DNA of 64,000 nucleotides from contig CM074813.1 in the NCBI GenBank assembly GCA_037447605.1, positions 1,116,001 through 1,180,000 of the forward strand, written 5' to 3'. The stretch is from Zygnema circumcarinatum SAG 698-1b (taxonomy: Eukaryota > Plantae > Zygnematophyceae). A model generated the notes under the pieces. It was not told where the DNA came from. It was given only the letters and a program-made list of their open reading frames with translations, and made no database searches. Made by a program: the position numbers and the translations under genes. Shown here in pieces: positions 1 through 51,834 of this stretch; the stretch's first letter is position 1, and each line of letters starts with the position of its first letter.

Positions 1-2098
1 TCAAGCAGCGCGTGTCGGTGTGGACGGTATTACATCGTATTGAACAGAACCGTGACCCGCAACGGACACATGTGTACGGCGCAACGTAACCGCACACGGA
101 ACAGAAGTGTCGCCGTGACCCCGTTGACGGAGGGCCAACTGCCGCTGTCAAGTATGACGGAACATGGACCGGAAGCGCCTCAAGATTGGCCTGCAAATGG
201 CAGCACAGACAACCCCAATCCTTTAATGGTGTACTCTCTCAATCTAAACTAGCGCATTTTATCTTCAAGATAATGAAGCAGTATGGATGATACGAAGGAT
301 GAGCTTTCTTAACAAATATCTTGCCCTTCACTTAACTGAAGCAAATGCAATTCGAGATTTGAATGTTTAAACTCAGGCTGTGAAATCGGTGAATTAAGCT
401 ACGGTGCAAGCCAATACACAATTAACGTACTCTTGCACATCGAGACAACGAGAAATATGCAACACGCCACCGGCTTACAAGAGAGCACTCCCCTGTCTAA
501 AAACATTCGAGCACGTGGCGATATGAAGTGAGGAAAAGAGACGACAGCATTCGAGCGAGTGGATAGAAGAGAGGAATAAGAGGCGATAGGGAGAAGCAAA
601 CGAGTGGTAAAAAGAGAACAGAAAACGACAGGGAGAGCAGGGAGACATAGAGAGCGCACAAATGAATCAGTCAGATTCAGATCAGTCAGATGAGATTGAT
701 GATGAATCAGTCAAGCGTTCGGTATTACTAAATAGAAAACAGATGGTGAAGGGCAAGAGAAGCAAGAGGAAGGGAGGGGAATGCATGGGAAGCAGGAGGA
801 AGATCAAGAGAACGGCGTAGAGGAGAGAGAGGGAGAGATGGGGACGAGCGAGAATGTGAGCGAGAGAGAATGTGAGCAAGAGACTGTCTAAAGCTTGAAG
901 CTTTCACAGACTAATCAGAGTGGTTAAGCAAATGTTTGGTTTAAGTAGTACCTCCTGAAGGAGCTCTGCAAAGCTTTTGAACCCTTTCTTTCCCGCTTGT
1001 CTCTCTCTTTCTAACGCCTTCGACTGCCTCGTTTTCCGCTTTGTGCTAGTAGGTTGCTTTTTGGGATGACCAAATACACCTGGATTGTAAAAATAATAAT
1101 AACACGATCAAGGTTTCAGCGTATATGGTTACGGGTGAATGAAACTAGTAACTAAGGAGTTCCAAGAAGAAGCAAACACCGATAATTCTCATTTTCTATG
1201 TGTCCGGCGACGTACAGCTCGCGAATTCTTCTCATCTTCATGGACAATGAATCACCAACATTCTACACCTGCGAGTGATAAGTGAAACATAAGATCACCC
1301 AAACTTTTTTTGATTTGGTGGGACAACACAAGACACTTAGCAACAGACCTCATCTGTGCAATCAACCCAGAGGGAAGGCAGAAAATGGTGTGCATTAACC
1401 TAAGTAAATGGGAGCAAGATTCTGACCTTCCTCCATGTCCTGCGCTTCAAAATTTTCGTCGTCTTCTTCTGGTTCTGCTGCGTCCACATTGTCGTTTTCA
1501 AGTGATTCGAGTCTCGCTTGAGCGGCCTGCCCTTTAAAAACAAACACCCCAAGAAAGGGTCAGGAGATTTTGAAGGAGATTTTGAACCAAGGATACGAAA
1601 TGTGAAGAAACAAAGGGTATTTTTTTGGGTTTTTGGAAGTCAATTCCATTCTTCCAATGGGAAATTAGAATGGAAGAAAAGATAGACGTATCTGGGGAAA
1701 GCAGGATCCAAAAAAAGCCATACAAGTTGGGGAAGGGAAGAAAGGAGAGGGATTCACAAGAGGAAAGGTGAGGGGCAGATGGAAAGGGAAATGAAAGGAA
1801 AGAGGTAAGAGAAAGTATAAGAGGGGGAAGAGAGAAGTCGAGAGACGGGAGTGTGGTGAGAATGGAGGGGCTATAAGGAGGACGAGAAATAAAAAATGAC
1901 GAAATAAACTAGGGAGGGGAAGAATAAACTGGAGATGGAAAAACCGCTGAAGGATAGACATAGAGAGAGGGATAGAGAGCGCGAGGGAGAGAGAGAGAGA
2001 GCGAGAGAGAGAGAGAGAGAGGGAGAGAGGGAGGGAGGGAGGGAGGGAGGGAGGGAGGNNNNNNNNNNGAGGGAGGGAGGGAGGGAGGGAGGGAGGGG

Positions 2099-29700: not shown

Positions 29701-32700
29701 GGTTGAAAACTGATGTGTTTAACCAACCACCCTTGCAGGCTGCGGGCCTGCCAATGGCGGGGTGACCTGCCAGTCCGGCTTTTGCTGCTCCCAGGGCGGA
29801 ACTTGCAGCACAGATTTCTCCGCCTGCAGCTCACTATGCCAACAGGGCTATGGCGACTGCGGTAAAACCCCGCTAGTTCAATGGGTCAACTTATGCGCTG
29901 CAAATTTACGACTGTCCTTCTGCCTCCACTCTCAGGGCCGTGGTCAAACAGTGTGACTTCAATTCCTAACCAATGGTTGGGCTCTTGTAGGATGTGGGCC
30001 TAGCTACAACTACGTGCAATGCGCCACCGGTTCTTGCTGTTCATGGAATGGCTGGTGTGGAACAAACAACACATACTGTGGGCCAGGTTGCCAAAGGGGC
30101 TACGGCGATTGTGGTGAGTGCATGTTTTCTAAGTTTGCTCTGACCACTTTCCGTCGATCACCATGGAGAAAAGGTTCAATCTGACTTATGGGTTTGGCTT
30201 AGCTTAAGGACACTACCGCAGGAGGAGAAGAAGTTCTTGGAGTGTAAGAAGGGTAAATGGCATTCTTGATAGATATCGAGATGGAATTACTCGGGATGAA
30301 CAAGCCCATTCGCTTACAAGTGACTAGTTGTGGACTTACGCTTGTAGGTGCAAATGCCCTCCCACCAAGTCCACAACCTCCACGCTCGCCACCCCCTCGG
30401 CCTCCCCCTCNNNNNNNNNNCCCCTCCGCTGTCCCCATCTCCTCCTCCCCCTTCACCTCCTCCGACCCCGTCTCCTCCCCCTCCTTCTCCTCCTCCACCA
30501 TCTCGTCCTCCTCCCTCTCCCGCTCCATTATCTCCATCCCCTCCGCCCCCATCCCCTCCTCCTCCCTCTCCCCCTCAACTACTTGCATCCCTACCGCCCC
30601 CTTCCCTTCCTGCTTCTCCCTTTCCTCCCTCTCCTCCACCACGCCCCCCCCCTCCTCGCTCTCCACGCCCTCCTCCTTCCCCCCCACGCTCCCCACCTCC
30701 TCCCCGTTCCCCTCCTCCTCTCCGGTCCCCTCCTCCTCCCCGTCCACCCCCACGCTCCCCTCCTCCTCTCCGTTCCCCCCCTCCTCTTCGTTTCCCCCCC
30801 CCTCCCCGTTCCCCCCCTCCTCTCCGTTTCCCCCCTCCTCCCCGTTTCCCTCCTCCTCCCCGCTTTCCTTCTCCTCCCCGTTCTCCTCCCCCACTGCCCC
30901 CGTCTCCTCCTCCTCCTTCCCCTCCTCCGCCTCCCCCCTCCTTCCCTCCTCCTCCTCCCCCTCCACCATCTCCTCCTCCTCCATCCCCTCCGCCTCCTTC
31001 TCCTCCCCCCCTCCCTCCACCGTCTCCACCTGCACCACCGCCACGTGGTATAGCCCTACCCCTTTTTGCATACACACATGCTGATCCTACCGTGCATGTT
31101 AGTGCTTCACCTGAAATTTCACGCTGGGAGCCACCCCTGGGTGAATCGTTTGTGGCTGGCCTCAATGTCTTCGATTTTTTTTACTGATTATGTGTAGAGT
31201 AGGATTCGTTCGGAACATGGCACTGCTAAAAAAACAAAAATCGGAGTCCACAAATCATGAGTGAAGACATGTTTTTCCGTTCCTACGCTCCTCGACTTTC
31301 TGAAGATGCCACTTATACTTCCAACCATTCCGCTCATACGGATTGGCCTGTGCAGACGATCGCAAGGGTGGATTAACAGTGGAACCAACTGTAAGAGTCC
31401 GATACATGAACACATACTTCCGGTACACAAGCTCGGGATTCATCAATTCGGATGACGTGACGCAGTCTTGGGTCGGTGCCAACTACTGGAATTGGGCAAA
31501 GCAGACTGGAGTGGTTCAACCGGTGAAGGACCAAGGAACATGCTGTGAGTGATGAACCTCACCTCGTCCATTTCAAAGAGTATGAGACTGATTTTCAAAA
31601 ACGCGTCAACTGATTGCTGATATTGTGCTCAGAGAAAAGAAGAGTCAAGGCAGTTTTCCACGTCTTCAAACTGTTCACGTCACGTTGAAGTCATATGGCT
31701 AATGGTGAATACATAGAATCTGTTTTAAGTCACGTGCTATGCTGGCTTCTGTGCAGTTACTTGCTGGATTTATGCCCCGGTCGGCGCAATCGAGAGCGCA
31801 TATTTTATCGCCAATGCTAAGCGCTTAAGCGTGACGAGCATTTCAGAGCAGCAAGTTCTGAACTGCAACAAGCTGAACCTCACGTGCATGAGTGGCGGCT
31901 GGCCAACGAACACCCTCAACCTTGCATCGACAAATGGGCTTCTCTTTTCGTCGGAATACAGTGTATCAAATGACTGTGACTCCCAGGTAAAATTTCTGCT
32001 TGAATCACCACTGTAGGTACATTATGCACTTGTTTTCTATTATGTGGCAGAAATGCTCTTTTGTTCGGAAGCATTGTATCATTGTGAAACATAAAGAAGG
32101 CCCCCCAAAAAAGTAACATTCCAACGCCCCTCGGCTAACTTTTCATAGAACCTCACTACAGTACTGGCAAAAGATTAGACTCCACTCCACCTTCGGATCC
32201 CATTTATTAATAATGTCACTTTATACAGTTTCATAAATACATTCTCTTCAGATGAAGAATCAGAATTTCTGCATTGAGTTACGCTCAATTGACTTGGATC
32301 ATATTGCTCTTCTATTATATTAGATACATTTTTCAATATTTCATTTGCACATTTCTGTTGCATGGTAACTTCACTATTTCACAGTCCGGTCACTGATGTG
32401 GAGATGAAACAGAAAGCCATCCTTGTATTGCGTGCAGGTGCCGAGCTCTGTGAGGATATCTGCATATGAACAGGTCAATGTGAACGATTGGGTGGGCCTC
32501 TGGTTGGCCCTTCAGCAGCAGCCGGTCATTGTGAACATCGAGGGAAGCAGTGACAGTTTTGTCAACTACAATGGCACGGTGCGTATGTAAGCTTCACTAC
32601 TGCAGTTTCTGCGGCAGTGACAGTACTCTTACGGTCTTCGGACTTCTGCTAAGTGTGTAGCTATTCTGACTGTCAAATGCTGGCGATATAGTTGAACTTA

Positions 32701-35679
32701 CTGTTGTGTTTTTAGAGTTTTGAGGGGTTATTGGGGATCTATGGCTGATGATGGCTGCTGTTATGAATAAACAAGTGGTGATCTCTCTAAATGGATCCTG
32801 GATGATTGCTGTTTGCAGTACATCTACGGCGATGAAGATTGCTTTTCCAACGGTATCGACCACAGCGTGCTCTTAGTCGGCTATGATTTGACCAATGCCA
32901 TCCCAAATTGGATCATCAGAAACTCGTGGGGTACGACTTGGGGGGATAAAGGATACATGAGAATGAAGATCACAACAGGAGATGGCATATGTGGAATAAA
33001 TACTCAGCCAGGCTTGATTCCCGTCTTTGCTTTTCCGAGTAAGTACGAGCAAACCTCAGCCTTCACATACGAGCATACTGCTGCATCCCGATGCTCTATA
33101 TCCCACATGACATTCTAATATTCTCTGTGTAATATTTAAGGTTTTGACTATTTGGTTGTAACTCAAGCAGTACATAGTAAGCCACCTTGAATTTAAAATG
33201 TATGCCTATCACACTTCTAGTGCAGTACTGTACGTGAACACGTGAAGTGAGGGGCTGGTGCCATAGCTTGAAAACGAAGTAATGCTGGAAAGAATCATCT
33301 CGTTTAGTCTAATCCAAAACTTCTCCACTATGCCAAAACTCATTCCCGACTGACTTTTGACATAAACACTAAAAAAACTGACTCTGACAGAGCATTCCTG
33401 ATGGTCTTTCTTGCAGGTGTCGACCCCTGCAATCGGAACAACTACGCTGTGGCGAACGGCAACTCTGACACAAGTCTCGGCTCCATGAACCCGTGCGGAG
33501 GGGGACGATGTGTTCCATCCGGCACGTCGTACCACTGCGAGTGCAGCAAACCAGTTTTTGTTCCTGTTCTCAACAGCGACAACACAGAAACTTGCGCTCC
33601 GGGTGGGTTTCCAATGAGCAACTGGGAGTAACTGAATGCTACAAGGCATGTTTGGTGGAATTTTGGAATGAAAGCTGAAGATATTCGATGGATCGTGAAA
33701 ATACTCAACATAAAGTGTTTTGTGAAGCAGCTTCTCCGTGCACCTTCTACACATCGAATCCCTGCGGGATTGGGACTTGCTTGAATTCGGACGGAGCAGT
33801 GGGTACATACACATGCATTTGCCCCCTTGGGTATGCTCTCGACCCGGCGGACAATAGCTCATGCCTCCCCGGTAAGTCTCTCTTAAACATCATGCGAAAG
33901 TTTTCCTAGCAGTGAGGGCTTCGCACAGGCAGGACTCCACGAAAGTGACAAACTGAAGCAGAAAGGTTTTAAATCAGCGTGAAAGCTTCATTCTATGATC
34001 CACTGTAACGTTTTATCTGTTGAAACTTCCATTACTCCCCGGCTTTTTCGAGTGGTTTCCAGGGTTGCTCCCATATTTGCATAACCTTTCTGTAGTCTGT
34101 ATCTATCATCAGAAATGCTCTCCAAAAACAGTCATTCTTGCAAGCTATATGTGACCGCAAATGAGCAGATACTGATGTGAATCTAGCGATGAGATGCGGG
34201 CGCAGCGGCTGCTCTCACGGGGCTGAAATCCTTCGTTGTCCCTCCGGGATACAACCTTTCCTGTTCCATCATTTATAATGTCTATGGCATCGACGCAGAC
34301 ACATTTGCCAGGCAGAACCCGGTAATTCTTCATCTCTCTTGAACATACTTTCTGCAGGTTGGCATTCGACAGATATCATGGAACTGTGGCCTGAAGACAA
34401 CTTCCCTTCCTGTGCAAGGACTGGGCCATGCGTTGGAGCTGCCGACCTCATTCGATGCTTCATTTCATGTCCTTTGAATAAGAAGATGATGTTGCTTGTA
34501 AAGTGTGACATTTCATGGATTCATGGGCTTGATATGTCGATTGGGTTTTTGGGCTTGCAGACAATTGACTGCACCCAGACGGTTCCTCCGTCGGTCGTCC
34601 TCAACATCACGAATTCGCAGAACTGTTCGCTGGTCTATGCGGCCGATGAGGTATGTGAAGGTTGCAATCACCGTTTCTCACCAACTACTTTTTATCAGTA
34701 ACTTGTAAACATGACGCCATCTTGCATGTTGCTACTGGATTCCTGAAATGAATGTCAAATTTCTGGACTTCGGGATTGTTCCTGCATGCAGGACGATAAC
34801 TGCACTGCAATTGAGGAGAAATTCAATCTTAACACGTCACTGGATGGGCCGGGCTCCCCGAATCCCGGACTGAACTGCTCTCTCATCGAGCCCTATCAGC
34901 AGGTCAGCTTCATACTGTAACTATTCCTTGTCTTCGCTTAACCCTAACAAAGAAGCACTGCACTGCAGACCAGCCTATGTGAGTTCAGTGGACCTGGGAT
35001 TTTGGATCTTGGAAGTAAACTTCAAAGTAGTAACCCTATTATCATTGCTGCTTGAATGGGTATACACTGCACACCTTACAGATATGCATCCAGAGAGGCG
35101 CCCTCCTGTACCTGGGGTCCTGCACGCTGTTCTATGTCGTCCAAGAGGGCGAGACCTGCTCCGACATCATAAGCGCGCGCTTGGGCGGCAACGCAACCCT
35201 GTTCTATCTGCTGAACCCCGGAATCTACTGCGGCCGCATCGAGTTCGATGTCTCCGCGAAGTCGTTTGGGCAGAAGGTGAGGGAGGGAGGGAGGGAGGGA
35301 GGGAGGAAGCCGACCTGAAGCTGGCGACTTAGGACATACATGATCTATATATATGCGTTTTTATTTCCTTTTCTCTTTATCCCTTTTGTTGTAGAGTTTA
35401 ACCACTGCAGCGTATTCGTTTTTCCCCCCTTTCTTTGTGAATTGTCCTTTATAGGTCTGCCTCGAGGCGGGCACCTTGGGAGGCGCCGTGGCGGGCTGCA
35501 AGGGACGAGGGCTGGCGATCGCGGCTAAGGACAGCTGCGCGAGTCTGAGCAAGTGCTTCACTAAGAGGGAGACCTTCAAGACGATGAACCGCACCCCCTG
35601 CACCTCCACGCTGCTCAAGAAGCTCCTCGGCGCGAGCAGGAGCCCTGTCATTTGCATTCCGAAAACGTCGCCTTGCTAG
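23775..35679 (+). CDS. Gene A: secreted signal peptide-14x hevein/CBM18-Pro-rich stalk-papain C1A protease-2x EGF-4x LysM-like protein (29 exons, about 1,500 aa)
   Basis: Signal exon 23775-23832 (MASAVLLALLLTLCVTASEG); leader exons 24186-24283 and 24467-24539. Hevein exons: 24935-25057, 25379-25498, 25952-26074, 26350-26472, 26776-26895, 27158-27280, 27402-27527, 27647-27769, 27896-28018, 28164-28292, 28494-28616, 28879-29001, 29739-29861, 29991-30113. Pro-rich exon 30348-31044 (contains an N gap). Papain exons 31356-31544, 31757-31986, 32438-32578 and 32819-33038 (KDQGTCFTCW, IDHSVLLVGY, IRNSWG). EGF exons 33417-33602 and 33731-33871. LysM exons 34206-34321, 34561-34650, 34792-34902, 35082-35276 and 35455-35679. 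All junctions are GT-AG and phase-compatible. The two leader exons are the least certain. Confidence 0.9.
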
Positions 35680-36467: not shown

Positions 36468-38791
36468 AGCGAAGCGACGCGATCAGAGGCGATCAACTTA
36501 ATTGAGGGGCCCCGACCGGCAGCGACTGCGCGCGCGGGGCCATCCGCGCCAGAGGCGAGTGACTTTATCGAGGAGCCCCGCCCGGCACCAACTGCAAAGG
36601 GGCGCCAGTGTCCGTTTGCATCTCCCTATAGGCCGGATGTAGAGTGTCACGTCACGGCTCGCTCGCTGCAGATTCTGAGCCTGTTTCTGTTGCCCCGCGC
36701 GGGTAAATTTCGGATGCAGATGGGCTTCACCACTCAGCTTCTAGAATGAACTGCAACGAAAAACAGTTTAAGTTGGCCAAGCAGCTTAGAAAGATTGGAG
36801 TAGATCATTTAACTTAGAAAACAGCATAGAAAAAGGGGTGCAGTTTAGAGTTTTCGCTTTAGGTTTCCCTTCCAACGGCCTCCTTGAGGTCTGCTGATGC
36901 AGCTGTAGGCTCCTCCCCTTGTGGAGTGTCCCTTAGTCATCACTTGTAAACTCATCTCATTATCAATACCTTCTTCGGAACTCTGTTTCCATGCTGAAAT
37001 TCGTCTGAATTCTGAGGTGAAAACTGCAGTGGAATGCTTGGTGATAGCGAGATGTAAGTTTGTCTTGTGGTCAGTTTGCACGGTATTTAGACTCAATACG
37101 AATCTGCCACTCTGCAAGTCTATGTCCCTTTGTTTCACTCAAGAGCCATTCAATCAGCTGCGCCACAGAATAACATGCAGAACTTTGACACTGAAAATTG
37201 AAAGGTTTGCCTTCGATTATAAAAAGAGTGATTACAATAATAGCAGGGTGGAAAATTTCATTGAACAACAAGTTTTCATTACAATAATGGTTTCTCTGGC
37301 GGCCACCTCTCTCTAAACACAATCAGAATCCACATCACCGTCAGTTGCATCCGTACACACCCTGTACGGTAACTTCTAGCCTCCTATTTTTTTCGGAAAA
37401 TGATACAGGCGCCCCACTTTTTGGATATCTGCGCCCCCTTTCGGGAAAATTTGTACTTTCATTTTGGCTAATCACGCGCCCCCCTTGGATCTTTCGGGAG
37501 GAGAGATCTTGTCGACAATCGGACCCCGCGCCTCGCGCGCAGGATCCGACCGTGCACCGACGTACGGCGCCGCGCCGCGATTGTCTGCAGTAAGCAGTCC
37601 TCATATTTTCGCCATCGGGGCGAATTTCTTGGGGACGCACTGTACAGGGTGGAAAATATGACTCCTTACTGTAGGCAATCGCGGCGCGGCGCCGTACGTC
37701 GGTGCACGGTCGGATCCTGCGCGCGAGGCGCGGGGTCCGATTGTCGACAAGATCTCTCCTCCCGAAAGATCCAAGGGGGGCGCGTGATTAGCCAAAATGA
37801 AAGTACAAATTTTCCCGAAAGGGGGCGCAGATATCCAAAAAGTGGGGCGCCTGTATCATTTTCCGAAAAAAATAGGAGGCTAGAAGTTACCGTACAGGGT
37901 GTGTACGGATGCAACTGACGGTGATGTGGATTCTGATTGTGTTTAGAGAGAGGTGGCCGCCAGAGAAACCATTATTGTAATGAAAACTTGTTGTTCAATG
38001 AAATTTTCCACCCTGCTATTATTGTAATCACTCTTTTTATAATCGAAGGCAAACCTTTCAATTTTCAGTGTCAAAGTTCTGCATGTTATTCTGTGGCGCA
38101 GCTGATTGAATGGCTCTTGAGTGAAACAAAGGGACATAGACTTGCAGAGTGGCAGATTCGTATTGAGTCTAAATACCGTGCAAACTGACCACAAGACAAA
38201 CTTACATCTCGCTATCACCAAGCATTCCACTGCAGTTTTCACCTCAGAATTCAGACGAATTTCAGCATGGAAACAGAGTTCCGAAGAAGGTATTGATAAT
38301 GAGATGAGTTTACAAGTGATGACTAAGGGACACTCCACAAGGGGAGGAGCCTACAGCTGCATCAGCAGACCTCAAGGAGGCCGTTGGAAGGGAAACCTAA
38401 AGCGAAAACTCTAAACTGCACCCCTTTTTCTATGCTGTTTTCTAAGTTAAATGATCTACTCCAATCTTTCTAAGCTGCTTGGCCAACTTAAACTGTTTTT
38501 CGTTGCAGTTCATTCTAGAAGCTGAGTGGTGAAGCCCATCTGCATCCGAAATTTACCCGCGCGGGGCAACAGAAACAGGCTCAGAATCTGCAGCGAGCGA
38601 GCCGTGACGTGACACTCTACATCCGGCCTATAGGGAGATGCAAACGGACACTGGCGCCCCTTTGCAGTTGGTGCCGGGCGGGGCTCCTCGATAAAGTCAC
38701 TCGCCTCTGGCGCGGATGGCCCCGCGCGCGCAGTCGCTGCCGGTCGGGGCCCCTCAATTAAGTTGATCGCCTCTGATCGCGTCGCTTCGCT
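36468..38791. repeat. 2.3-kb palindrome: arms 36468-37583 and 37676-38791 with a 92-bp loop, ending at the N gap; probably an assembly fold-back
   Basis: Mirror-identical ORFs in the track (36845..37138- equals 38121..38414+; 36921..37316+ equals 37943..38338-), and spot-checked ends are symmetric about 37629.5. Confidence 0.9.
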
Positions 38792-38884
38792 NNNNNNNNN
38801 NCGTGATTAGCCGAAATGAAAGTACAGTTTTTTCCCGAAAGGGGGCGCGGATATCCAAAAAGTGGGGCGCCTGTATCATTTTCC
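37395..38884. mobile_element. MULE-like long-TIR MITE; its left end is at 37395 and its true right end at 38884, after the gap
   Basis: Left TIR GGAAAATGATACAGG at 37395 and right TIR ...CCTGTATCATTTTCC ending at 38884. A perfect 9-bp TSD ATTTTTTTC lies at 37386-37394 and 38885-38893; 9-bp TSDs are typical of Mutator. Confidence 0.85.
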
Positions 38885-40060: not shown

Positions 40061-40386
40061 ACTGTTTCTGGTGTGGCACGCGCCACAAGAGATATGGTTT
40101 TCAAGCCGACTTTTGGACGATAGCGGGGAGTGGACCGCCGCCGCCGCAGGCGGGAGGGAACGGGGACGGGGACAGGCCGACGGAGCCGCCTCCGTCAGTC
40201 CGTCCGGCCGTCGGGGCGGGCGGGAGGGTAGGGGAGGGGAGGGAGGGGAGGGAGGGAGGGGAGGGAGGGGAGGGAGGGAGGGGAGGGAGGGAGAGAGCGG
40301 AGGGGAGAGAGCGGAGGGGAGAGAGCGGAGGGGAGAGAGCGGAGGGAGCGGAGGGAGCGGAGGGACTGACGGCGGGCGGGCTCGCC

Positions 40387-43300
40387 ATGGTGCAAATGTA
40401 CGGACGGTAGCGCTGGCGGTCTTCTTGGCGGGGAGAGGGGAGTGGGAAGAGGGAAGAGGGGAGAGGGGAGAGGGGAGAGGGGAGAAGGGAGAGGGGAGAG
40501 GGGAGAGGGGAGGGGAGGGGGAGAGAGAGGGATGAGGGGAGAGGGATGAGAGGGATGAGGGGAGAGGGATGAGGGGAGAGGGATGAGGGGAGAGGGATGA
40601 GGGGAGAGGGATGAGGGGAGAGGGATGAGGGGAGAGGGATGAGGGGAGAGGGATGAGGGGAGAGGGATGAGGGGAGAGGGATGAGGGGAGAGGGATGAGG
40701 GGAGAGGGATGAGGGGAGATGGTGGAAAGGCGAGTAGAGATAGGAAGGGAGATGGGAGAGTGAGGAGAAATGCGAGAGGCGAGAAGGAGGAGAGAGAGGC
40801 GAGAAGGAGCGGGGGAGATGAGGGGAGAGGGTAGAGAGGAGAGAGAGGGGCAAGAGGAGAGGGAAATGGGGACTACAAGCAGGGAAATGGGGAGGAGTGA
40901 AGCTAAGAGGGAAGAGGGGAGGGGAGGAGGGCAGAGGGACGTGTGGAAAGACTGAGGGGAGCGAGGCGGAGAGAAAGAGGGAGAAGGAGTGGGAAGGAAA
41001 TGTAGCCTGAGAGAGTGAAAATATAGGAAAGGGTAATGGAACGGGAGCTAACAGGGAGTGCGAGAGAAACGGGAGACCAGGAACGAAAGAATGTTCTTTG
41101 GAGGGAAAAACAAAGCAGATGGAGTTGATTGGAGACGGAATGAGCGGGAACACGCCTCGTAGTGAAAGGAAGGATCAGAGTGGGATTGGTGAAGGACAGA
41201 GGGAAAAGGAGTGGGAAGACAAATAAAAAGGCATGGAGGCATGCGGTTGATGATTCTAGCACACTGTTTAGTCAAAGAGAGACAGTATCGTTCACTAAAC
41301 AAAAAAAAAAAAATAGTGGGGAATGGGAGACAGACTGCATATGCTTCTGCTTGTTCAGTTGGCTGGTTATTTTTCGGCCATATGGAACATGGAGAGGTGG
41401 TCGTGAAAGAGACTACAAGCAGGCAAATGGGGAGGAGTGAAGCTAAATGTAGCATTCTAATTTTTCCGCGTTGCCTTCCTTTCTTTTAGAGAAACCGATA
41501 GCACGGCGTTATATGCTGAACATTGTGCAAAGTCTTTGGGGTTGATGCAGTCGAAGGCCCCTCGGCTCTAGGGCTTTACTCTTGTTCGTCTTTCTCGCCG
41601 GTCTCTCGTTGCTGGCGGATGCAAGGAGTAAGAATTCACAACTTGAGACTCCTCACCTTGAGTTACATTCAAAGCGAGCAAGAAGTTGTAGCTTTAGCAG
41701 GTTGTCTGCACTTTCAACATAATTCTACACGCATTTCATGGGTACGAATATCTTAATATATATCTTAATACTGTATACTTTACTTTTTTTTTTTTTTTCA
41801 TTTTGGTTTCTTTTATTGACATTTTTTCTCCCTTCGATGCTTACTGAATTCCTCGTCCGCAGCTACATTGAGGATATGATTTTTTTTGTCGTTCTAAATG
41901 TACTCCAGTGTCCAGCCTAACAGAAGCCTGCATTCAGACGCTGACCAGCTGAAGGTTTAGTATATTGTACAGTAGCAAATATGCGAGAGACGTACGTTCT
42001 ATGCTTATAGTTGCCTTCACTGTGAAACAAGTTCCATGCCGTATGCGCATTTAGCTGCACAAATCCTTTCAGCCAAAAGGATATCATCCGAGTCCCAGCG
42101 TGAGCCTTCGTTATTCACTTTCCTCTGCATGGCGGCATACCCTTACTTAGGGCTTGGTGAAGCATCTTTCGAAGTTTCACCCAAACATTCTAGACTCCTA
42201 ACAACCACTTATGGCAGGGCCTCGAGCACCTCCACCTCCCTGGTCAAAGGTGAAGCCGTTTCCAACACGCGGATTTCCTCCCCCTCCTTCACCACCATCA
42301 CCACCTCCCCCAACACCTCCTCCTTCACCCCCGCCCCCACCATCTCCTCCACCGCCCCCTTCTCCTCCTCTCCCACCCTCTCCTCCTCCGTCCCCTCCTC
42401 CACCAACACCTCCATCCCCTCCTCCATCCCCTCCTCCCCCTCCGTCACCTCCACACCCACCGCCTCCTCGCCCACCTTCACCCCCTCCACCTCCGCCCTC
42501 ACCACCTCCATCGCCCCCACCATCACCTCCTCCCCCAAGCCCTCCTTCTCCACCTCCTCCCCCAAGCCCTCCCTCTCCACCTCCTCCTCCAAGCCCTCCC
42601 TCCTCCACCTCCTCCCCCAAGCCCTCCTTCTCCACCTCCTCCCCCAAGCCCTCCTTCTCCACCTCCTCCCCCAAGCCCTCCTTCTCCACCTCCTCCCCCA
42701 AGTCCTCCTTCTCCACCTCCTCCCCCAAGCCCTCCCTCTCCACCTCCTCCCCCGAGACCTCCTTCTCCACCTCCTCCCCCAAGCCCTCCCTCTCCACCTC
42801 CTCCTCCAAGCCCTCCCTCTCCACCTCCTCCCCCAAGCCCTCCTTCTCCACCTCCTCCCCCAAGTCCTCCTTCTCCACCTCCTCCCCCAAGCCCTCCCTC
42901 TCCACCTCCTCCCCCGAGACCTCCTTCTCCACCTCCTCCTCCAAGCCCTCCGTCTCCACCTCCTCCCCGAAGCCCTCCTTCTCCACCTCCTCCCCCAAGA
43001 CCGCCTTCTCCACCTCCTCCTCCCAGCCCTCCTTCTCCACCTCCTCCTCCCAGCCCTCCTTCTCCGCCTCCTCCTCCAAGCCCTCCTTCTCCACCTCCTC
43101 CTCCCAGCCCTCCGTCTCCACCTCCTCCCCGAAGCCCTCCCTCTCCACCTCCTCCCCCAAGACCACCTTCTCCACCTCCTCCTCCCAGCCCTCCGTCTCC
43201 ACCTTCTCCCCCAAGCCCTCCTCCACCTCGACCTCCTCGATCCCCTCCTCGATCCCCTCCTCGATCCCCTCCTCGATCCCCTCCTCCCCCAAGACCTCCT

Positions 43301-46300
43301 CCACCTCGACCTCCTCGATCATCTCCTCCCCCACCCTCTCCACCGCCGCAGCGGCCTCCTTCTCCCCCTCCTTCACCTCCCCTGCCACCTCCACTTCCCC
43401 CCCCACGGCCACCACCATCTCCTCCACGAATTTCCACAACACAAGGTGCCCCCTCAACTTCCTTTCTGCTAATGCCGGGAAATTTCTGAACTATTGTCGT
43501 CATCAGCGTACTCCTGTCTAATGCGATACAAAATAGGCGAGAAATGGCATAGTGTATGCTATGTTTTAGTGGTATGGCATGGTTTCTCTGACTGAGGGCT
43601 TTCGTTTGAGGGCTTTTTTTTTTTTTTTTCGGACTGAGGGCTTTTCATTGTGTGGTTTCCGCCCCACCAAAGTTTGGAACCCTCCCATGCTGCCCTCTGC
43701 CAATCGGGGAACCCTCTGGCGGTTTGAAATACAGTGTAGCCTCGATAAAGTGCTTACTACATGGTAAGTTGAATCAAGGATTTACCATGAAGAACGGAGC
43801 ACAGGAAGTTCTCGTACGGTTTAGTCACTCTGTCATTTGTACCGAGTGTAACGGGCCGATGGGGGCAACCTTTCGTACCAAAGGGGAAAACCTAGTGCCG
43901 TAGCTTTCAAGCCATCGTGTTCTTTTTGGTTTAGGAAAGCGAGAGAGCATTATCTTAAGCTAAACTTTCTGAGGTAAGCTTTAATTTATCGAGGTTTTAT
44001 TTCGACAAAAAGTACACCGTTCTTCTATGAGCAGCACATCATCCCGGCGGCCGACGACTCCTTGCGTGACGTACGAATGCTCCAAAAAAATTGCTATCCC
44101 CGATTCTGGCGGTACAGTAGTCTGCCGCGATATTTGCGATAGACTGACGATATACTGATTGCCAGGCCCTTGAAAACACTGGCTACCAGTAATGTGTACA
44201 GATGTGGCTACCAGCAATTCTTTAATCTCCGCCTTCGTTGTTTATGTTGTGCCAGAGGAAATCCTGTTGAAGGTCAAAGCTGCTATTACGACAGACCCCG
44301 CCGGAGTGCTGCGAACATGGTCGCCTGCAACGGCTGCATGCGACGGAGGATGGAGCGGGGTCGATTGTGGCGGCACCGCTCTTGTCCAAACCATGTAGGT
44401 CCGCTTGTGCTCAACGTGTCACAATTTCTCCATGCGGCATAACGAATGACCCGGCTACGAATTGCATATCTGGAATACGTTCTGCTTTGAGGTGATCAGT
44501 GCTTTGGTTGCCCACTGCAGAAAACTCAACAATGTGAATCTGAGGGGAACCCTATCGCCATTCATAGGCGAACTGGTCAGCCTTCAGGAATTGTAAGTAG
44601 AAAGGATGTATCGTAGATTAATGCTGTATGCATAAAGCATTTGGATTCGAGAAGTGGCTTATCTCTGTTGCATTCGCCAAAACTTGATATCGTTATATTT
44701 GCAGCTCAGGTTGACGCTGTCACGTCATCATGGGTTTCCGTTTCACTCATACTTGCAGGAATTTGGCGGGCAACCAGTTTCAGGGCACCATACCAGCTTC
44801 CATTTTCAGCCTTCCCAACCTCAAGATCTTGTAAGAAATAATTTTATGGTAATATGTTATGTGATGTTTAACTTGTGTTTTGTGATGCCATTGGCTCTGT
44901 GCATCACTAATCTATTCAAGCATCCTCGTTTTTGGATAACATTCAATAAAGGCGGACATCTTTACTGCACCATATGTGCAGTGTTCAGTTGGGCATTTAG
45001 AACTTGGGATGGAATGTCAACAAGATATTCCTTGGGAATTGCTACTAATCTTCCTCTTTTGTTGGCCTTCTGCAGAAACTTGGAGGGCAATAATCTGACA
45101 GGCTTTATCTCTACCTTCCTCACAGCATCGATTGCTAGCTTGACGACTCTGCAAGAATTGTATGGCTACTGCTAAGCAATTTTTTCCACTGTATCAATTC
45201 ATCATTATTGATATGAAAGGCTTCAATAATGTGATGCGATCTCACTAGAAGAGATCTCTCTGCCAGACATATCTACTGGAATAAGGGAAAATGCTTCGTA
45301 AGACTTTGGTTGTAGCTTTCTTTGACGTGACATTTGGAAGGTTCTATGGGATTGCAGACGTCTTGGCAAGAATAAGTTTTCTGGTGCTATTCCGGACACA
45401 TTGGGGAACGTAACATCTTTGCGCATACTGTGAGTATTGCTTTGCTTAACCCTTTCAAGTAGCAGGTGCCATGATGGGATTCTCACCGGTCGGATCAATG
45501 AAAAGAGCAGATTAAGGGGGTAGTAGAGGAGTGGAGAGATTGGGGGACTGATGTTTGCCTGAATGAGCCTAAAACAAGATCCTTTTCTGCTGTACTTCAG
45601 AACCTTAGATGGGAACAACTTGACTGGCGAAATTCCGGACTCGCTCGGGAACTTGACCGGCCTCTACAGACTGTATGTCAATCGTGGCCTTTCGCACATT
45701 TTTATTGTATAAAGCGCATTTGAAGTTTTAGCTGCTGCAGAAATATGCCTTGGTAAAGGGAGACACGTTTGAGCCAAGCAGAGTACTTCAGATGTACTCT
45801 ATCTGAATGCTGAGGGAAAAAACGAATTAGTTTTATAAGTAGTTAAAAATCTGTATTTGTTCCTCCTTTTCATTTCTTTTGGTGCAATCCTTCCCAAGGA
45901 CGGCTCTATTTGAAGCTTAGATAGTGTGTGCTATGAAGGCATGCTAACAAATGCATGGGTTGCTTTTCTGGCAGGACTCTGAACAACAATAAACTTACAG
46001 GACTGATTCCGTCGACCTTCAGCCAATTTCAGAGTTTGAGCCAACTGTGCGATATGTGACTCTTAACTTCAGTTGCATGAATGGCCATGAGGGAATTTAC
46101 GTTTGTCGTGAATGCACTTCTTATACTTAAAAATGTTCTGGAGTAAAAGTGAGAAGATAGAACTTTGGAACGCGACAGAGGCGAGAGAGCAGGAAGGAGA
46201 GGGCAGTGTGGATAGGGGAGGGGGAGAGGTAGATCAGGTGTGTGTGTGTGTGTGCGTGTGTGTGAGAGAAAGAGAGAGAGAGAGAGAGGATGCAGGAACT

Positions 46301-49300
46301 TTCTCAAGCAAGCTCAATCCCCGAAGCTTGACTTGTTTCCAAATCACAATAAATGAGAAAATTCTTTGGTCCTTGTATGCAGGGATCTGAGCGATAACCT
46401 CCTCTTCGGCTCTGTTCTGATCCAAATAAATTCACTCATCACTCCCACTATCAATTTTGACTCCAACTATTTGTCCGGATCGCCATTGCTTACAGTCAAT
46501 GGCAACCAGCAATGCGGCAGCTTTTCAAGCAACTGCTTCACCTTTGCTGAGACATGGAACGCTGTTTGCGGCGCCAAGCCATCTCTCCGAGGAGACTGCG
46601 GCAGCTTCTGCAACGCTTCCCAGGCCATGGGGGCATGCGGCGGCCATGGCTTCTGCTCAGGGATCAATGGAGTCTGCACCTGCGATGCGGGATACTCTAA
46701 CCAAGACTCTCCATTCACTTGCATATTTGGTATGTCCCCCTCAAACAGAAATTCTTTACATGAAAATCCTGTCTGATTTTCGGAGACCTTCTTCTCACCT
46801 TTTCCAGACTTTTCCGCCATGAGCAGACCCTTCTTTCATATCTGTTTCCTTCCCCCACTTCCCAGTCCCCCCCCCCCCTTCCCTCCTTTTCCAACCCCAC
46901 ATCTTCATCATCTTCTTCATCTTCCCATCTTCTTCATCCTCTCATCTTCTTCATCCTCCCATCGTCTTCATCTTCCCATCGTCTTCATCTTCCCATCGTC
47001 TTCATCTTCCCATCTTCTTCATCTTCCCATCTTCTTCATCCTCCCATCTTCTTCATCTTCCCATCTTCTTCATCTTCCCATCTTCTTCATCCTCCCATCT
47101 TCTTCATCTTCCTTCCCATCTTCTTCATCTTCCCATCTTCTTCATCTTCTCTTCATCTTCTTCATCCTCCCATCTTCTTCATCTTCTTCATCTTCCCATC
47201 TTCTTCATCTTCCCATCTTCTTCATCTTCCCATCTTCTTCATCTTCCTTCTTCATCCTCCCATCTTCTTCATCTTCCCATCTTCTTCATCTTCCCATCTT
47301 CTTCATCTTCCCATCTTCTTCATCTTCCCATCTTCTTCATCTTCCCATCTTCTTCATCTTCCCATCTTCTTCATCTTCCCATCTTCTTCATCCTCCCATC
47401 TTCTTCATCTTCCCATCTTCTTCATCTTCCCATCTTCTTCATCCTCCCATCTTCTTCATCTTCCCATCTTCTTCATCTTCCCATCTTCTTCATCCTCCCA
47501 TCTTCTTCATCTTCCCATCTTCTTCATACTCCCATCTTCTTCATCTTCCCATCTTCTTCATCTTCCCATCTTCTTAATCCTCCCATCTTCTTCTTTTTTC
47601 CCCCCCTTTTTCCTTCCTCCCACTCGCAGAGGACCGCGGGCTGGGTCTGGAGGAGCCCTCCGCGCCGCGCCTCGCACGTGTGAACGCGTACTTCCGGTAC
47701 GCGAGCGCGGGGTACCTCGCGGGGGACGGCGGGGACTCCGCGTGGCTCGTGGCGACCAGGTGGTCCTGGGAGGGCCGCCGGGCGGTCCCCGCGGTCAGGG
47801 ACCAGGGGACCTGCAGTGAGGACCCGCCCGCCCGCCCGAAATTTCGTCAAGGCTTTTTTTTTTTTTTTCCTCAAAAAAAAGTTAAAAAAAAAGTCGAGAT
47901 GGAGAGTCATGCTTCTGTACAGCTCGGAAGATAGTTTAACGTTGATTGAATCTTTCACTGCTCTGTCGATTGGGCTCAATCTGTAATGGAATTTGAGCAG
48001 AGTGTTTTAGATGTGGGTTTGAAAGGCTATCATCACCGTCGAGAGAAACATCTTCACTGCAAGGATGTGTTTCTGTTCTTCGGACAAGGGAGAGGAGGTG
48101 GAAAGGAGGAGGGGAGGGAGGATGAAGTAGTGCAGAGACGTATGCATGCTAAACGTTGCTGCTCGTTGTGCTGTTCCCCTGTGGTGCATAGACACGTGCT
48201 GGGTATTCGGGCCCATATCCGCCATAGAGAGCGCGGCATACATCGGCGGAGGGGGCCTGCAGGCCGTGCCTGTGCTCGCGGAGCAGCAGGTCATCGACTG
48301 CTCCGCTCTCAGCACCGACTGCACATCAGGAGGCAATCCGTCGGACGCATTTGAATATGCGGAAAATTCGAACCTCATCCCCAACAGCTCCTATGCTGGC
48401 CCTTCAACATGCGCTGCAGGGCAGGTAATTGCATTGTGACAGTCAATCACATCTCTCTCTTTCTCACTCTCTCCCTCTCATTCACTTTCTCTTTCTCTTT
48501 CTCACTCCCGCTCTCTCGGTGCTTTTTTGTAACCAATCCTTTGCTGCTTTCGTTTTCAAGACCGTGTTGCTGTTTTATTGAATGAATCAAATTGAATCAG
48601 TTGCACTTGTTCGCTTGTTTAATGTAACTTTTTTGAATGCAGGCTGGGAGTAGCATACGCATATTGTCATATGAAAGAGTACAAATGAATGGCTGGCTGG
48701 GCCTGTTGTTGGCCCTCCAACAGCAGCCCGCAGTTGTCAGTATTGAAGCGAGCAGCGAGAGTTTCATCAATTACAACCCTCAGATGGTGAGTGTATGATC
48801 TCATGTTAAGATTACATTACATCCTGGTTCAGGGAAAGATCATCGCCAGGGACAGTTTCCGTTAAGTGATACGAATAATAAAAAGCAATTGAGCATGCAT
48901 GCATGTATGCATGCCTGCCTGCATGGGCATGCTGAATTCTAACTAGAGCATGGCCGTGCAGGGCACATATGAGGATGAGGACTGCTTCTCCAATGGAGTC
49001 GACCACGTGGTGGTAGTCGTCGGTTACGACTTAACATCCTCTCCGCCGTATTGGCTCATCCGAAATTCATGGGGTTCAGCCTGGGGAGAGGGCGGCTACA
49101 TGCGCATGAAGATAGCAGGGGGGGACGGGATCTGCGGAATCAATACCCAGCCTGCTCTAATTCCGAACATTCGGCCCAAAAGTAAGTCAAACCTAAAGCG
49201 TTTGTTGTGAATTATGTGACCTTAACAACGCTCTATGCAGGTAAGGCATCATGTATAGTGCTGGTTGCCCTCTCTCTAGAAGCAGTCGAAGCTTGAACCT

Positions 49301-51834
49301 TACCTGGCTAACTCCACCTGACCAACTCACGTTACATGCGCAATCGTTGCCTTTTTTGCAGCAAACGACCCATGCAACCTTATTGACAACTTCCCTCAGA
49401 GAGCCCTCCGCTCGAGATATGGTCCGGGAGAGATGAACCCTTGCGGCAATGGCGTGTGCATTCCGGCCGGCTCCTTGAACGAGTGTTTGTGCGCTCAAAA
49501 CTTTGTGGCGGTGACGAACACAGACGGCATGCAGACATGCGCCCCAGGTCAGATACAATGTCACGGAAATGCAGCTTGTGACCAACTTTGACCATGTCTG
49601 CATGTGACCAACTTTTCTCTATTCGAAGTGGTTTGTAGGGGAGGAGTGCTTTTGAGTCAAGACTGGCAATTAGTTTCTGTACATGGATACGAGAGACTCC
49701 TCGGATTGCGGTATGCCTGATGTTTTTTAATGCATTGATTTTGGCAGCGTCGCCCTGCACATTCACGCCGAAGAATCCATGTGGAGTGGGCACATGCGTG
49801 GACTCCACCGCAGTCCCGGGGACATATGCATGCGTGTGCCCTATTGGCTATGCTGCTGACTCCGTAGACAGTGTTCAGACATGCTTTCCAGGTGCCTCCA
49901 TCATCCCTCCCTCTCTCCCCTCCTCCCTCTTTGTGTGTGTGATGGGTGTGCTGAACACTGCGTTGCTTTCATTGATCAGTTATGAGGTATGTTTTGTGAT
50001 GAATGATTTCATTCACAGCCTAGTCCATGCCTTGCTTTGCTGAATAGTGTGTGTAGATTTCCTAGCACTTGTTGTCTGCAAAGTGCATACTTATGGATGG
50101 ATACAGCACACTTCCTTTCTCGACATCACGAAAAAGAAGATCAAGACTAGGAAAGCCTTCAAATTGCTATCCTGCTTGTATAGAATGGTTTTGAATTTAA
50201 AAAGTGGCGAAATCGTGTGAGTAGAGTCGATCGAATCCAAAAAGAAGAGTGAGTTTCGTTCTTTGAGATGAAGTTTGTGCTGGCATGCTTTCTAGATAGT
50301 GTCTGAATTAGAAGTTCCAAAACAGCCGATGTATGGATTCATTCATGCAGCCACTCATTGGGCAGATTATGCCTCTGTACACAACTTCTGATGTTGTCAA
50401 CTTTTGCATAAAAACCGAGTGACAGATTCTTTGTTTGTCAATTGGAATTGCAGCGGCTGCCTTGCAAGGTCGTAAATTGAACTTCACTGTGCCCGAGAAC
50501 ATCACTCTGCCCTGCTCCACAATCTCCAGCGTGTACGGCATCCCCGCAGTTGAATTCGCTTCACAGAACCCGGTAAACTGGACCTCTATGCTCTAAATAA
50601 TGCTTTTCGTCGCAGTTATTTCAACGCTGCCGCTTGACTGGTAAAGCTCCAACATTGGAAATTAGATACCTTTGTCGTTTCTATCTGCAACGATAAAGTG
50701 TGGTGCAATGCACTGCACCTGCAGGGTCTAAATTGCAACGCAACCTTGGGATCGGGAACATTGGTGAATGTGACTAACGCTCGCAACTGTTCAGTGACAT
50801 ATTCGGTGAATGATGTAAGTTCTTTCAAATACTCCCTAACCCAGCTTTTGAACTAGAAGTGTGAAAGTAATCTTGCTCTTGTTCTTTCCTATCAGATGAG
50901 AAAGTTTACGACCCTCGACGAACTACAACATCTTTATATAAATGCATGTATTCTCAGTCATGTTCAATCTCGCCTTCTGATTGTGTTGCAGGGTGACACG
51001 TGCGCCTCCATTGAGCAACTGTTTAACCTAACCACACTTTCCGGCCCGGATTCTCCAAACCCGGACCTGGACTGCTCACAGCTTCAGACTTTTCAGCAGG
51101 TAAACAATGACTCCTCCAACAACCACTGTTTTTATTATTAACCACTGTTAACAACTGTCTATTGTTATGTTAAGTCAAATTTCGTTTTCCAAAAACGCAG
51201 GCAAATCACTCCTTCCCTACTTCTTGCAGATCTGCTCCCAGCTAACGTGTAGCTTTATCTCATCTTTCGCAGATCTGCATTCAGGGAGGAGTAGTGGAAT
51301 ACCAAGGACCGTGCACGAAATTGTACACTGTGCAGGCGAGCGAGACGTGCCTGTCCATCATACGCGACCTTCTGGATGGCGACGCGTTGAAGTTCTACAC
51401 TCTGAACCCCGGAGTGCACTGCGGGCAGCTGCAGGTCTCTTCGGGGGCTGGCGGATTTGTTCAAGAGGTGAACTGCAAACTCTTTCTTCCTTCAAAACAT
51501 TTTATCCCTTGCCTTTTGTTGTCAGTCCGATATTTTAATACGCCTTTCCGTCAGCCTCCACGGATCAACTGAGGATGTGCGGAATGTCCCGCAGGTCTGC
51601 CTCGAAGCGGGAGACTTGGGAATCAGCACAGGGTGCTCCGGCTACAGTTTGCGCATTAAGAACACTGACTCGTGCTCGCGTCTGAAGCCGTGCTTCACGA
51701 AAAAAGAGACGTTCAAGAAGCTCAACAGCGGCAAGGCGTGCACTGCCAAACTCCTCAAGAGCATTGTCGGGACGGCGGCTCCTAATTTATGTGTGCCTAA
51801 AGTGAGGCAAGCAAAGTGTCCGTACAGCTATTAG
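40387..51834 (+). CDS. Gene B: secreted signal peptide-extensin-like (SPn) stalk-LRRNT-LRRs-EGF-papain C1A protease-2x EGF-4x LysM-like protein (23 exons, about 1,387 aa; apparent +1 frameshift near 42602)
   Basis: Exons 40387-40406, 41551-41627 (RALLLFVFLAGLSLLADA), 42055-42099, 42218-43445 (Pro-rich) and 44256-44394 (LRRNT, W..VDC). LRR exons 44521-44592, 44759-44830, 45076-45159, 45358-45429, 45601-45672 and 45975-46046, then 46383-46729 (LRR end plus EGF). Papain exons 47630-47815, 48192-48424, 48643-48786 and 48962-49181 (RDQGTCNTCW, VDHVVVVVGY, IRNSWG). EGF exons 49362-49547 and 49748-49891. LysM exons 50454-50572, 50725-50814, 50992-51099, 51273-51467 and 51595-51834. Confidence 0.88.
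40520..40720. repeat. 14-bp tandem repeat (GGGGAGAGGGATGA)n in intron 1 of gene B
   Basis: About 14 near-perfect copies read directly, within a larger purine tract at about 40420-41000. Confidence 0.9.
42535..43215 (+). repeat. Coding 27-bp minisatellite (CCAAGCCCTCCTTCTCCACCTCCTCCC)n encoding PSPPSPPPP
   Basis: About 25 variant units, inside the Pro-rich exon of gene B. Confidence 0.9.
46900..47590. repeat. Intronic pyrimidine minisatellite, unit about 17 bp (CATCTTCTTCATCTTCC)
   Basis: About 690 bp of CATCTT/CTT/CC variants between the EGF exon and the first protease exon of gene B. Confidence 0.92.

What the first reader, a model, noticed from the sequence alone, without database searches (positions are those of the whole stretch)
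40387..46729. Gene B: an extensin-LRR-EGF ectodomain fused to a protease instead of a kinase
Seen: an LRRNT exon and six phase-2 LRR exons (five of 72 bp, one of 84 bp; LxxNxLxGxIPxxLGxLxxL type), then a Cys-rich cap and EGF. Established: this exon layout is the hallmark of plant LRR receptor-kinase ectodomains, and LRX proteins have LRR then extensin, the reverse of the order here. Inference: a receptor ectodomain was recruited to drive a soluble or wall-tethered protease, giving a kinase-free receptor-protease.
Basis: partly seen in the sequence, partly recalled or inferred. Interest (0 to 1): 0.78.

Follow-up and report, generated by a model that had tools for sequence, protein, structure and literature searches.

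The report
Algal LRR-EGF-papain-LysM mosaic protease gene
This is a real, transcribed gene of a green alga close to land plants in which a proline-rich rod, receptor-type leucine-rich repeats and an EGF knot are spliced directly onto an intact papain-type protease followed by EGF and LysM sugar-binding modules. It is one more member of an unstudied algal family, not a one-off fusion.

Summary
RNA-derived contigs from four runs in two studies skip every predicted intron at GT..AG.

The frame stays open through Peptidase_C1 (Cys, His and Asn present, no I29 prodomain), two EGF exons and LysM-like exons to a stop at 51834. I saw no membrane span or kinase.

The "recruited receptor ectodomain" idea is partly supported.
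- The same cap/EGF module sits in front of a transmembrane kinase in a Mesotaenium protein.
- It also occurs alone, and in front of a Pro-rich tail.
- It occurs with the same intron positions in front of papain exons in a second organism.
So it is a shuffled cassette and an old family-level architecture, and no donor can be named.

The neighbouring paralogue, Gene A, joins its Pro-rich rod straight to the protease.

The 5' end is unresolved: there is a 1-bp frame change in the Pro-rich exon and no in-frame ATG for the signal-peptide-like exon.

The scan had already noted this family at least eight times on other pieces of this genome. Function is untested.

The parts
41545..41627 (+). Signal-peptide-like first coding exon (hydrophobic LLLFVFLAGLSLL, donor GTAAGA). 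The ATG at 41545 is one frame off the hydrophobic reading frame.
   Evidence: Its exit phase of 1 fits the Pro-rich exon. Not checked by RNA. Unresolved.
42218..43445 (+). Pro-rich extensin-like exon. It carries 39 SP3+ motifs, is 73% Pro after 42602 and has no Tyr. It has a 27/54/81-nt repeat array and a 1-bp frame change near 42598.
   Evidence: Its 3' end and donor at 43445 are confirmed by RNA contigs.
44256..44394 (+). LRRNT exon (plant LRRNT_2).
   Evidence: Pfam E=6.9e-8. The joints 43445>44256 and 44394>44521 appear in four runs.
44521..46046 (+). Six single-LRR exons, all phase 2: 44521-44592, 44759-44830, 45076-45159 (84 bp), 45358-45429, 45601-45672, 45975-46046.
   Evidence: All joints are GT..AG in four runs.
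46383..46729 (+). Exon holding the last one to two LRRs, the Cys cap and the EGF-like knot.
   Evidence: EGF_2 is weak. The module is conserved in six relatives with 15 invariant columns. Covered without differences by RNA contigs.
46730..47629 (+). Intron holding a 17-nt tandem repeat of about 41 copies (46900-47593).
   Evidence: Its removal is inferred from the loose end at 46729, which equals 47630-47659.
47630..49181 (+). Papain (Peptidase_C1) catalytic domain in four exons: 47630-47815, 48192-48424, 48643-48786, 48962-49181. The Gln/Cys (DQGTC|N|TCW), His (VDHVV) and Asn (IRNSWG) motifs are present. No I29 prodomain.
   Evidence: Pfam, PDB alignments, phases.
49362..49891 (+). Two EGF-like exons, each phase 1-1 (49362-49547, 49748-49891).
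   Evidence: Pfam EGF E=2.4e-4 for the second exon. Phases.
50454..51834 (+). LysM-like tail in five exons (50454-50572, 50725-50814, 50992-51099, 51273-51467, 51595-51834), ending in TAG.
   Evidence: The exon 51273-51467 matches the LysM of fern chitinase A, 5bum, at E=0.0025. Pfam is blank on the single exons.

Best explanation
Shown: Gene B is one transcribed gene. Its mRNA joins a Pro-rich extensin-like rod, LRRNT, about eight plant-type LRRs and a Cys cap/EGF knot directly to a papain-family catalytic domain.

Read from the sequence: the same frame continues through two EGF and about four LysM-like modules to a stop, with no membrane span and no kinase.

Inferred: the product is a secreted, wall- or matrix-resident endopeptidase of about 1,340 residues whose catalytic core is flanked by binding modules.
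- The LysM tail would hold it on GlcNAc-containing glycans such as chitin or peptidoglycan.
- The LRR-EGF cassette would supply a protein-binding surface for a substrate or partner. It sits where other papain enzymes carry the I29 inhibitory prodomain.
- The glycosylated Pro-rich rod would act as a spacer or wall-embedding stalk.

It is an ordinary member of an old family found in algae of the Zygnematophyceae type, built by exon shuffling of an LRR-cap/EGF cassette that the same algae also use in receptor kinases and in secreted LRR proteins.
For: - Splicing: eight GT..AG joints appear in four runs from two studies. The loose end at 46729 equals 47630-47659.
- One X1 contig of 3,288 nt carries 2,169 nt beyond 46729. 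That fits 1,865 nt of predicted downstream coding sequence plus UTR.
- All junction phases fit and there is no stop before 51834.
- Peptidase_C1 hits at E=5e-9 and 2e-18. The Cys aligns to Cys25 of dionain-1. The His/Asn segment aligns to actinidin and cathepsin K/L. No Pfam hit, I29 included, on the 61 residues before the catalytic domain.
- LysM: the 5bum match has its Cys pair conserved.
- Family: Gene A has paralogous C1 exons at 37-74% identity. L001 is collinear for LRRs, cap/EGF, C1a, C1b and C1c, with the same intron phases.
- Cassette contexts: kinase (P0004), Pro-rich tail (P0009), alone (P0010).
Against: - No activity, localisation or ligand has been tested.
- The 5' end is not proven. 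There is no in-frame ATG for the signal-peptide-like exon and a 1-bp frame change in the Pro-rich exon, so secretion is inferred.
- The EGF and LysM calls are weak at Pfam level.
- The rod has no Tyr, so covalent wall cross-linking of the extensin type is unlikely.
- The fold model of the cap/EGF exon was poor at pLDDT 63.
Confidence: 0.6

Rival explanations
1. The LRR-EGF cassette is a latency module. It takes the place of the missing I29 prodomain, keeps the protease inactive until a ligand binds or it is cut off, and the mature enzyme is only papain-EGF-LysM.
For: No I29 or other Pfam domain lies between the EGF and the catalytic domain. A short stretch before the mature start (..YFRY.S.G..) is conserved between Gene A and Gene B.
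Against: Gene A has the same protease without any LRR-EGF, its Pro-rich rod being joined straight to C1a, so the cassette is not needed for folding or latency in a close paralogue. No processing site was identified.
Confidence: 0.15
2. The protein acts on the alga's own wall or mating structures (wall remodelling, cell separation, conjugation), not on microbes. The LysM and LRR modules would bind endogenous wall glycans and proteins.
For: The HRGP-type rod is typical of wall proteins. Contig depth is high in all four runs, 150-440 against 5-15 for intron-bearing contigs, which suggests constitutive expression.
Against: The LysM matches chitinase-type, chitin-binding LysM. From my own knowledge, GlcNAc polymers are not known wall components of these algae.
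Confidence: 0.15
3. It is an expressed but 5'-broken gene. The frame change near 42598 and the missing start codon are real, so little or no full-length protein is made.
For: As assembled, the ATG frames (41545, 42211) and the frame that splices into LRRNT differ by one base.
Against: About 950 downstream codons are open, with catalytic residues intact. Both disruptions lie in C-runs of repeats, and the assembly has N gaps in similar repeats at 30411 and 38792. Transcript depth is high.
Confidence: 0.08
4. Two separate genes (an LRR-EGF wall protein and a protease) are joined only by read-through or by a wrong gene model.
For: LRR-cap/EGF proteins without a protease exist elsewhere (P0010, P0009).
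Against: All four runs show the exact exon-exon joint 46729>47630 and no alternative end. The phase is kept. The same order and intron phases occur in L001.
Confidence: 0.02

Closest known systems
Gene A in the same window (23775-35679) and the algal LRR-EGF-papain-EGF-LysM family (L001; earlier scan notes)
   Same: Same four-exon papain core at 37-74% identity, with EGF and LysM tail. L001 shares the LRR - cap/EGF - papain order and the intron phases.
   Different: Gene B has no lectin head, only a Pro-rich rod. Gene A lacks the LRR-EGF cassette and joins its rod directly to the protease.
Plant papain-like cysteine proteases (RD21, Rcr3/Pip1, actinidin; cathepsin L-like C1A)
   Same: Peptidase_C1 fold signature with the Gln-Cys-His-Asn motifs. 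Secreted or apoplastic enzymes. From my own knowledge, tomato Rcr3 works together with the LRR receptor-like protein Cf-2.
   Different: No I29 prodomain and no granulin tail. The LRR, EGF and LysM modules are on the same chain rather than being separate partners.
Plant LRR receptor kinases, and Mesotaenium endlicherianum ME000014S01168 (P0004)
   Same: LRRNT_2, 24-residue plant-type LRRs and one LRR per phase-2 exon. P0004 shares the cap/EGF module at 39% identity over 115 residues, blastp 1e-17.
   Different: Gene B has no transmembrane span and no kinase. Land-plant LRR-RLKs have no EGF after the LRRs.
LRX / LRR-extensins
   Same: LRR plus an SP3-5 proline-rich domain in a secreted protein.
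   Different: The order is reversed, with the rod first. There are no Tyr cross-link motifs, and a protease and LysM tail are attached. An algal relative (P0009) has the LRX-like order.
LysM chitinase A of ferns (5bum, 4pxv) and LysM receptors (CERK1/CEBiP)
   Same: Cys-bracketed LysM modules in tandem.
   Different: Attached to a protease, not to a glycosidase or a kinase. Similarity is weak at E=0.0025.

Membership tests
Peptidase C1 (papain family) | Sequence match to Peptidase_C1 above the curated cut-off | tested here: met
   Exons 48194-48424 (36.9 bits) and 48959-49180 (67.6 bits) against a cut-off of 20.7.
Peptidase C1 (papain family) | Catalytic Cys25, His159 and Asn175, and oxyanion Gln19 | tested here: met
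   DQGTC|N|TCW: the Cys aligns to residue 25 of dionain-1. VDHVV and IRNSWG lie in the segment that aligns to actinidin/cathepsin K residues ~148-213. The Gln, His and Asn positions were read from the sequence.
Peptidase C1 (papain family) | N-terminal I29 inhibitory prodomain (typical of C1A enzymes) | tested here: not met
   No Pfam family on exon 47632-47814. The exon before it is the cap/EGF exon, joined directly in RNA.
Plant LRR receptor kinase | LRRNT_2 plus plant-type LRR ectodomain | tested here: met
   for LRRNT_2. LxxNxLxGxIP repeats in the six exons.
Plant LRR receptor kinase | Transmembrane helix and protein kinase domain | tested here: not met
   The spliced frame runs into papain, EGF and LysM exons and then a stop at 51834. 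No kinase hit was found.
Extensin / HRGP | Ser-Pro(3-5) repeats | tested here: met
   39 SP3+ motifs; 204 Pro in 281 residues.
Extensin / HRGP | Tyr cross-linking motifs (YXY, VYK) | tested here: not met
   No Tyr in either part of the rod.
Extensin / HRGP | Signal peptide | tested here: inconclusive
   There is a hydrophobic exon ending at 41627, but the ATG at 41545 is one frame off. No RNA check was possible.
LRX | N-terminal LRR followed by C-terminal extensin | tested here: not met
   The rod (42218-43445) precedes LRRNT (44256), and this joint is shown in RNA.
EGF-like domain | Six-Cys pattern with CxCxxG[YF], and a Pfam match | tested here: inconclusive
   The pattern is present and invariant in seven sequences. 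Pfam EGF_2 scores 19 bits, below its cut-off of 22.1. The fold model is too poor to use.
LysM | Match to LysM domain | tested here: inconclusive
   PDB 5bum LysM at E=0.0025 for one exon. Pfam is blank on the single exons. The joined tail was not searched.
Algal LRR-EGF-papain(-EGF-LysM) family | Collinear LRR exons, cap/EGF exon and papain exons with shared intron positions and phases | tested here: met
   tblastn collinearity on L001: cap/EGF 6e-16, C1a 9e-8, C1b 4e-9, C1c 2e-12. Phases 2, 1 and 1 at the three junctions, read.

The most novel reading that the evidence does not exclude
The sister lineage of land plants runs a family of extracellular "sense-and-cut" proteins in which pattern-recognition modules (LRR, LysM, and lectin heads in paralogues) are covalently coupled to a papain protease. 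The LRR-EGF cassette would act as a ligand-gated substitute for the I29 prodomain. This would be a fused forerunner or parallel of the land-plant pairing of apoplastic proteases with LRR receptors such as Rcr3 and Cf-2.
Probability: 0.12. Interest if true: 0.8.

Novelty: new variant of a known kind. Interest (0 to 1): 0.5.

Why it matters
Papain-type proteases, LRR ectodomains and LysM modules are the three main extracellular tools of land-plant immunity, where they act as separate proteins. Here they sit on one expressed chain, in a multi-gene family of the algae closest to land plants. The same LRR-EGF cassette is also used in a receptor kinase.

This gives a concrete case of exon shuffling of receptor modules before or beside the origin of land plants. 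It also gives testable candidates for glycan-targeted proteolysis outside the cell.

For this particular gene the gain is modest. It is the plainest member of a family that the scan has met repeatedly.

Tried and rejected
The left part alone was laid, so the joint 46729>47630 rests on loose-end letters rather than on a listed joint.
- An exhaustive HMMER search with the cap/EGF exon found only 8 representatives and not the window's own protein.
- A word search with the P0004 ectodomain was swamped by land-plant RLK/RLP repeats and showed no papain fusion.
- The same search restricted to the cap/EGF part found only P0004 itself.
- No genomic locus is on record for P0004, so the exon layout of the kinase gene could not be compared.
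- Pfam was blank on the single LysM exons, the first downstream EGF exon and the Pro-rich exon.
- The AlphaFold model of the cap/EGF exon had pLDDT 62.8, so I ran no fold search on it.
- PDB sequence search with the cap/EGF exon gave only chance-level hits.
- Paper searches for LRR/papain/LysM in these algae, and for the run or gene identifiers, found nothing relevant.
- The joined spliced protein was never built for a search or a fold. All searches were done exon by exon by reference.
- A donor RLK family was considered and rejected, because identities to the kinase, papain, Pro-rich and stand-alone contexts are all 34-39%.
Full report
**What is there**

- LRRNT: 44256-44394.
- Six single-LRR exons of 72, 72, 84, 72, 72 and 72 bp: 44521-44592, 44759-44830, 45076-45159, 45358-45429, 45601-45672, 45975-46046. 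All enter and leave in phase 2.
- A 347-bp exon (46383-46729) holds the last one to two LRRs, a Cys cap and an EGF-like knot.

Pfam gives LRRNT_2 at E=6.9e-8. EGF_2 reaches only 19 bits, below its cut-off of 22.1. Upstream, the Pro-rich exon 42218-43445 is an array of 27/54/81-nt repeats. It encodes 39 SP3+ motifs, is 73% Pro in its larger part and has no Tyr.

**RNA test**

Five public runs of the same organism hold 29-51% of the words of 44200-49200, roughly the exon share. Laid on 43300-46860, contigs of four runs from two studies skip all eight introns at GT..AG, with no differing letters. The first of these is the joint from the Pro-rich exon to LRRNT, 43445>44256.

At 46729 every run has a loose end reading AGGACCGCGGGCTGGGTCTGGAGGAGCCCT. 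That string occurs only once in the window, at 47630, the first base of the predicted papain exon. One 3,288-nt contig runs 2,169 nt beyond 46729. That fits 1,865 nt of predicted downstream coding sequence plus a UTR.

Low-depth contigs (5-15, against 150-440 for the spliced ones) cover some introns. These are probably pre-mRNA or DNA carry-over.

**Downstream**

All junction phases fit, with no stop until TAG at 51832-51834. The frame passes through these exons:
- four papain exons: 47630-47815, 48192-48424, 48643-48786, 48962-49181
- two phase 1-1 EGF exons: 49362-49547, 49748-49891
- five LysM-like exons: 50454-51834

Peptidase_C1 is hit at E=5e-9 and 2e-18. The Cys in DQGTC|N|TCW aligns to Cys25 of dionain-1. 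The VDHVV and IRNSWG segment aligns to actinidin, cruzain and cathepsins K/L.

The 61 residues before the catalytic domain hit no Pfam family. The exon before them is the EGF exon, so there is no I29 prodomain. One LysM exon matches the Cys-bracketed LysM of fern chitinase A at E=0.0025 (5bum). Pfam is blank on the split LysM exons. I saw no membrane span or kinase.

**The 5' end is unresolved**

The frame that splices into LRRNT reads PPSPPSPPPPP only from about 42602. Before that point the extensin-like frame is the neighbouring one, which holds the ATG at 42211. The switch coincides with one extra C relative to the repeat unit.

An exon ending at 41627 (donor GTAAGA) encodes a signal-peptide-like LLLFVFLAGLSLLADA, and its phase fits the acceptor at 42217. 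Its only ATG, at 41545, is again one frame off, across a C-run.

The assembly has N10 gaps in similar repeats, at 30411 and 38792. I therefore think assembly indels are more likely than a broken gene, but I could not test this.

**Relatives**

Within the window, Gene A has the same four papain exons at 31358-33022, at 37-74% identity. Its Pro-rich rod (about 30400-31030) runs straight into the protease exon, with no LRR or EGF.

An exhaustive HMMER search of 1.84 billion representatives with the cap/EGF exon found only eight proteins. Six share the module. The alignment has 15 invariant columns, including all the Cys. Their contexts differ:
- P0004 (Mesotaenium endlicherianum ME000014S01168): LRR, cap/EGF, a Pro-rich stretch, a hydrophobic span, then Pkinase.
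- P0009: signal peptide, LRR, cap/EGF, then a Pro-rich tail. This is the LRX-like order.
- P0010: a complete secreted LRRNT, ten LRRs and cap/EGF, and nothing else.
- P0002: a cap/EGF exon on a 4-kb intron-containing contig (L001).

L001 carries LRRNT, about 13 single-LRR exons, cap/EGF, and then papain exons C1a, C1b and C1c. It is collinear with Gene B. The intron positions and phases at LRR|cap, EGF|C1a and C1a|C1b are the same.

The LRR-EGF-papain order is therefore an old family architecture. The LRR-cap/EGF unit is a cassette shuffled among kinases, wall proteins and proteases. Identities of 34-39% to every context do not single out a donor.

**Earlier scan notes**

These are leads, not evidence. 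The scan had already recorded at least eight genes with the LRR-EGF-papain-EGF-LysM body on other pieces of this genome. It had also recorded an LRR-EGF-PAN kinase and an LRR-EGF/HRGP protein. My own results for Gene A, L001 and P0004 agree with these notes.

**Reading**

Shown: one mRNA joins the rod, LRR and EGF to the papain domain.

Read from the sequence: an intact catalytic set, no I29 prodomain, an EGF and LysM tail, and no anchor.

Inferred:
- It is a secreted protease targeted by binding modules.
- LysM holds it on GlcNAc glycans.
- LRR-EGF binds a protein partner or substrate and sits in the prodomain's place.
- The glycosylated rod acts as a spacer.

Rivals are a latency role for LRR-EGF, a role in the alga's own wall or mating, and a 5'-broken expressed gene. 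The two-gene or read-through model is rejected by the RNA joints.

**Literature**

I found no paper on such fusions. PMC3061892 supports domain-per-exon organisation in SERK/NIK kinases. That this layout is not general to LRR-RLKs is my own knowledge.

**Limits**

The fold model of the cap/EGF exon was too poor to use. The organism's name was not given by the tools. Its assignment to Zygnematophyceae-like algae rests on the Mesotaenium hit and on earlier notes.

Noticed in passing
window 46900-47593: A 17-nt tandem repeat (CATCTTCCCATCTTCTT, about 41 copies, 91% matches) fills most of the intron between the EGF exon and the first papain exon. It blocks read laying across the joint.
   Followed up: partly
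window 36498-38761: A large inverted repeat. Identical ORFs appear on opposite strands (for example 36921-37316 + and 37943-38338 -, or 37345-37593 + and 37666-37914 -), mirrored around about 37630. This looks like a foldback element between Gene A and Gene B, next to an N10 gap at 38792-38801.
   Followed up: no
window 2059-2068, 30411-30420, 38792-38801, 58546-58555: Four N10 assembly gaps. The one at 30411 lies inside Gene A's Pro-rich exon, which shows that the assembler struggled in exactly the kind of repeat where Gene B has its 1-bp frame change.
   Followed up: partly
window 45102 (inside LRR3 exon): In run X4, one contig has a 255-nt loose end before 45102 (AAAGTTCATTTGTAAACGCGTCATTTATTT...) that matches nothing in the window. 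It may be a chimeric contig or a paralogue-derived join. Unexplained.
   Followed up: partly
window 40214-40861: Long purine-rich microsatellites (GGGA/GGGAGGGAG and GGGATGAGGGGAGA units) lie upstream of Gene B, with GC skew +0.49 over 40-42 kb.
   Followed up: no
window 47630-49891: The first papain exon and both downstream EGF exons are phase 1-1 symmetric, the class of exon that can be inserted or removed without breaking the frame. This fits the head and cassette swapping seen between Gene A and Gene B.
   Followed up: partly
L002 80-1393 (P0010): A complete transcript from another sample encodes a secreted LRRNT, ten LRRs and cap/EGF with nothing attached. The cassette therefore also exists as a free-standing protein.
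   Followed up: partly
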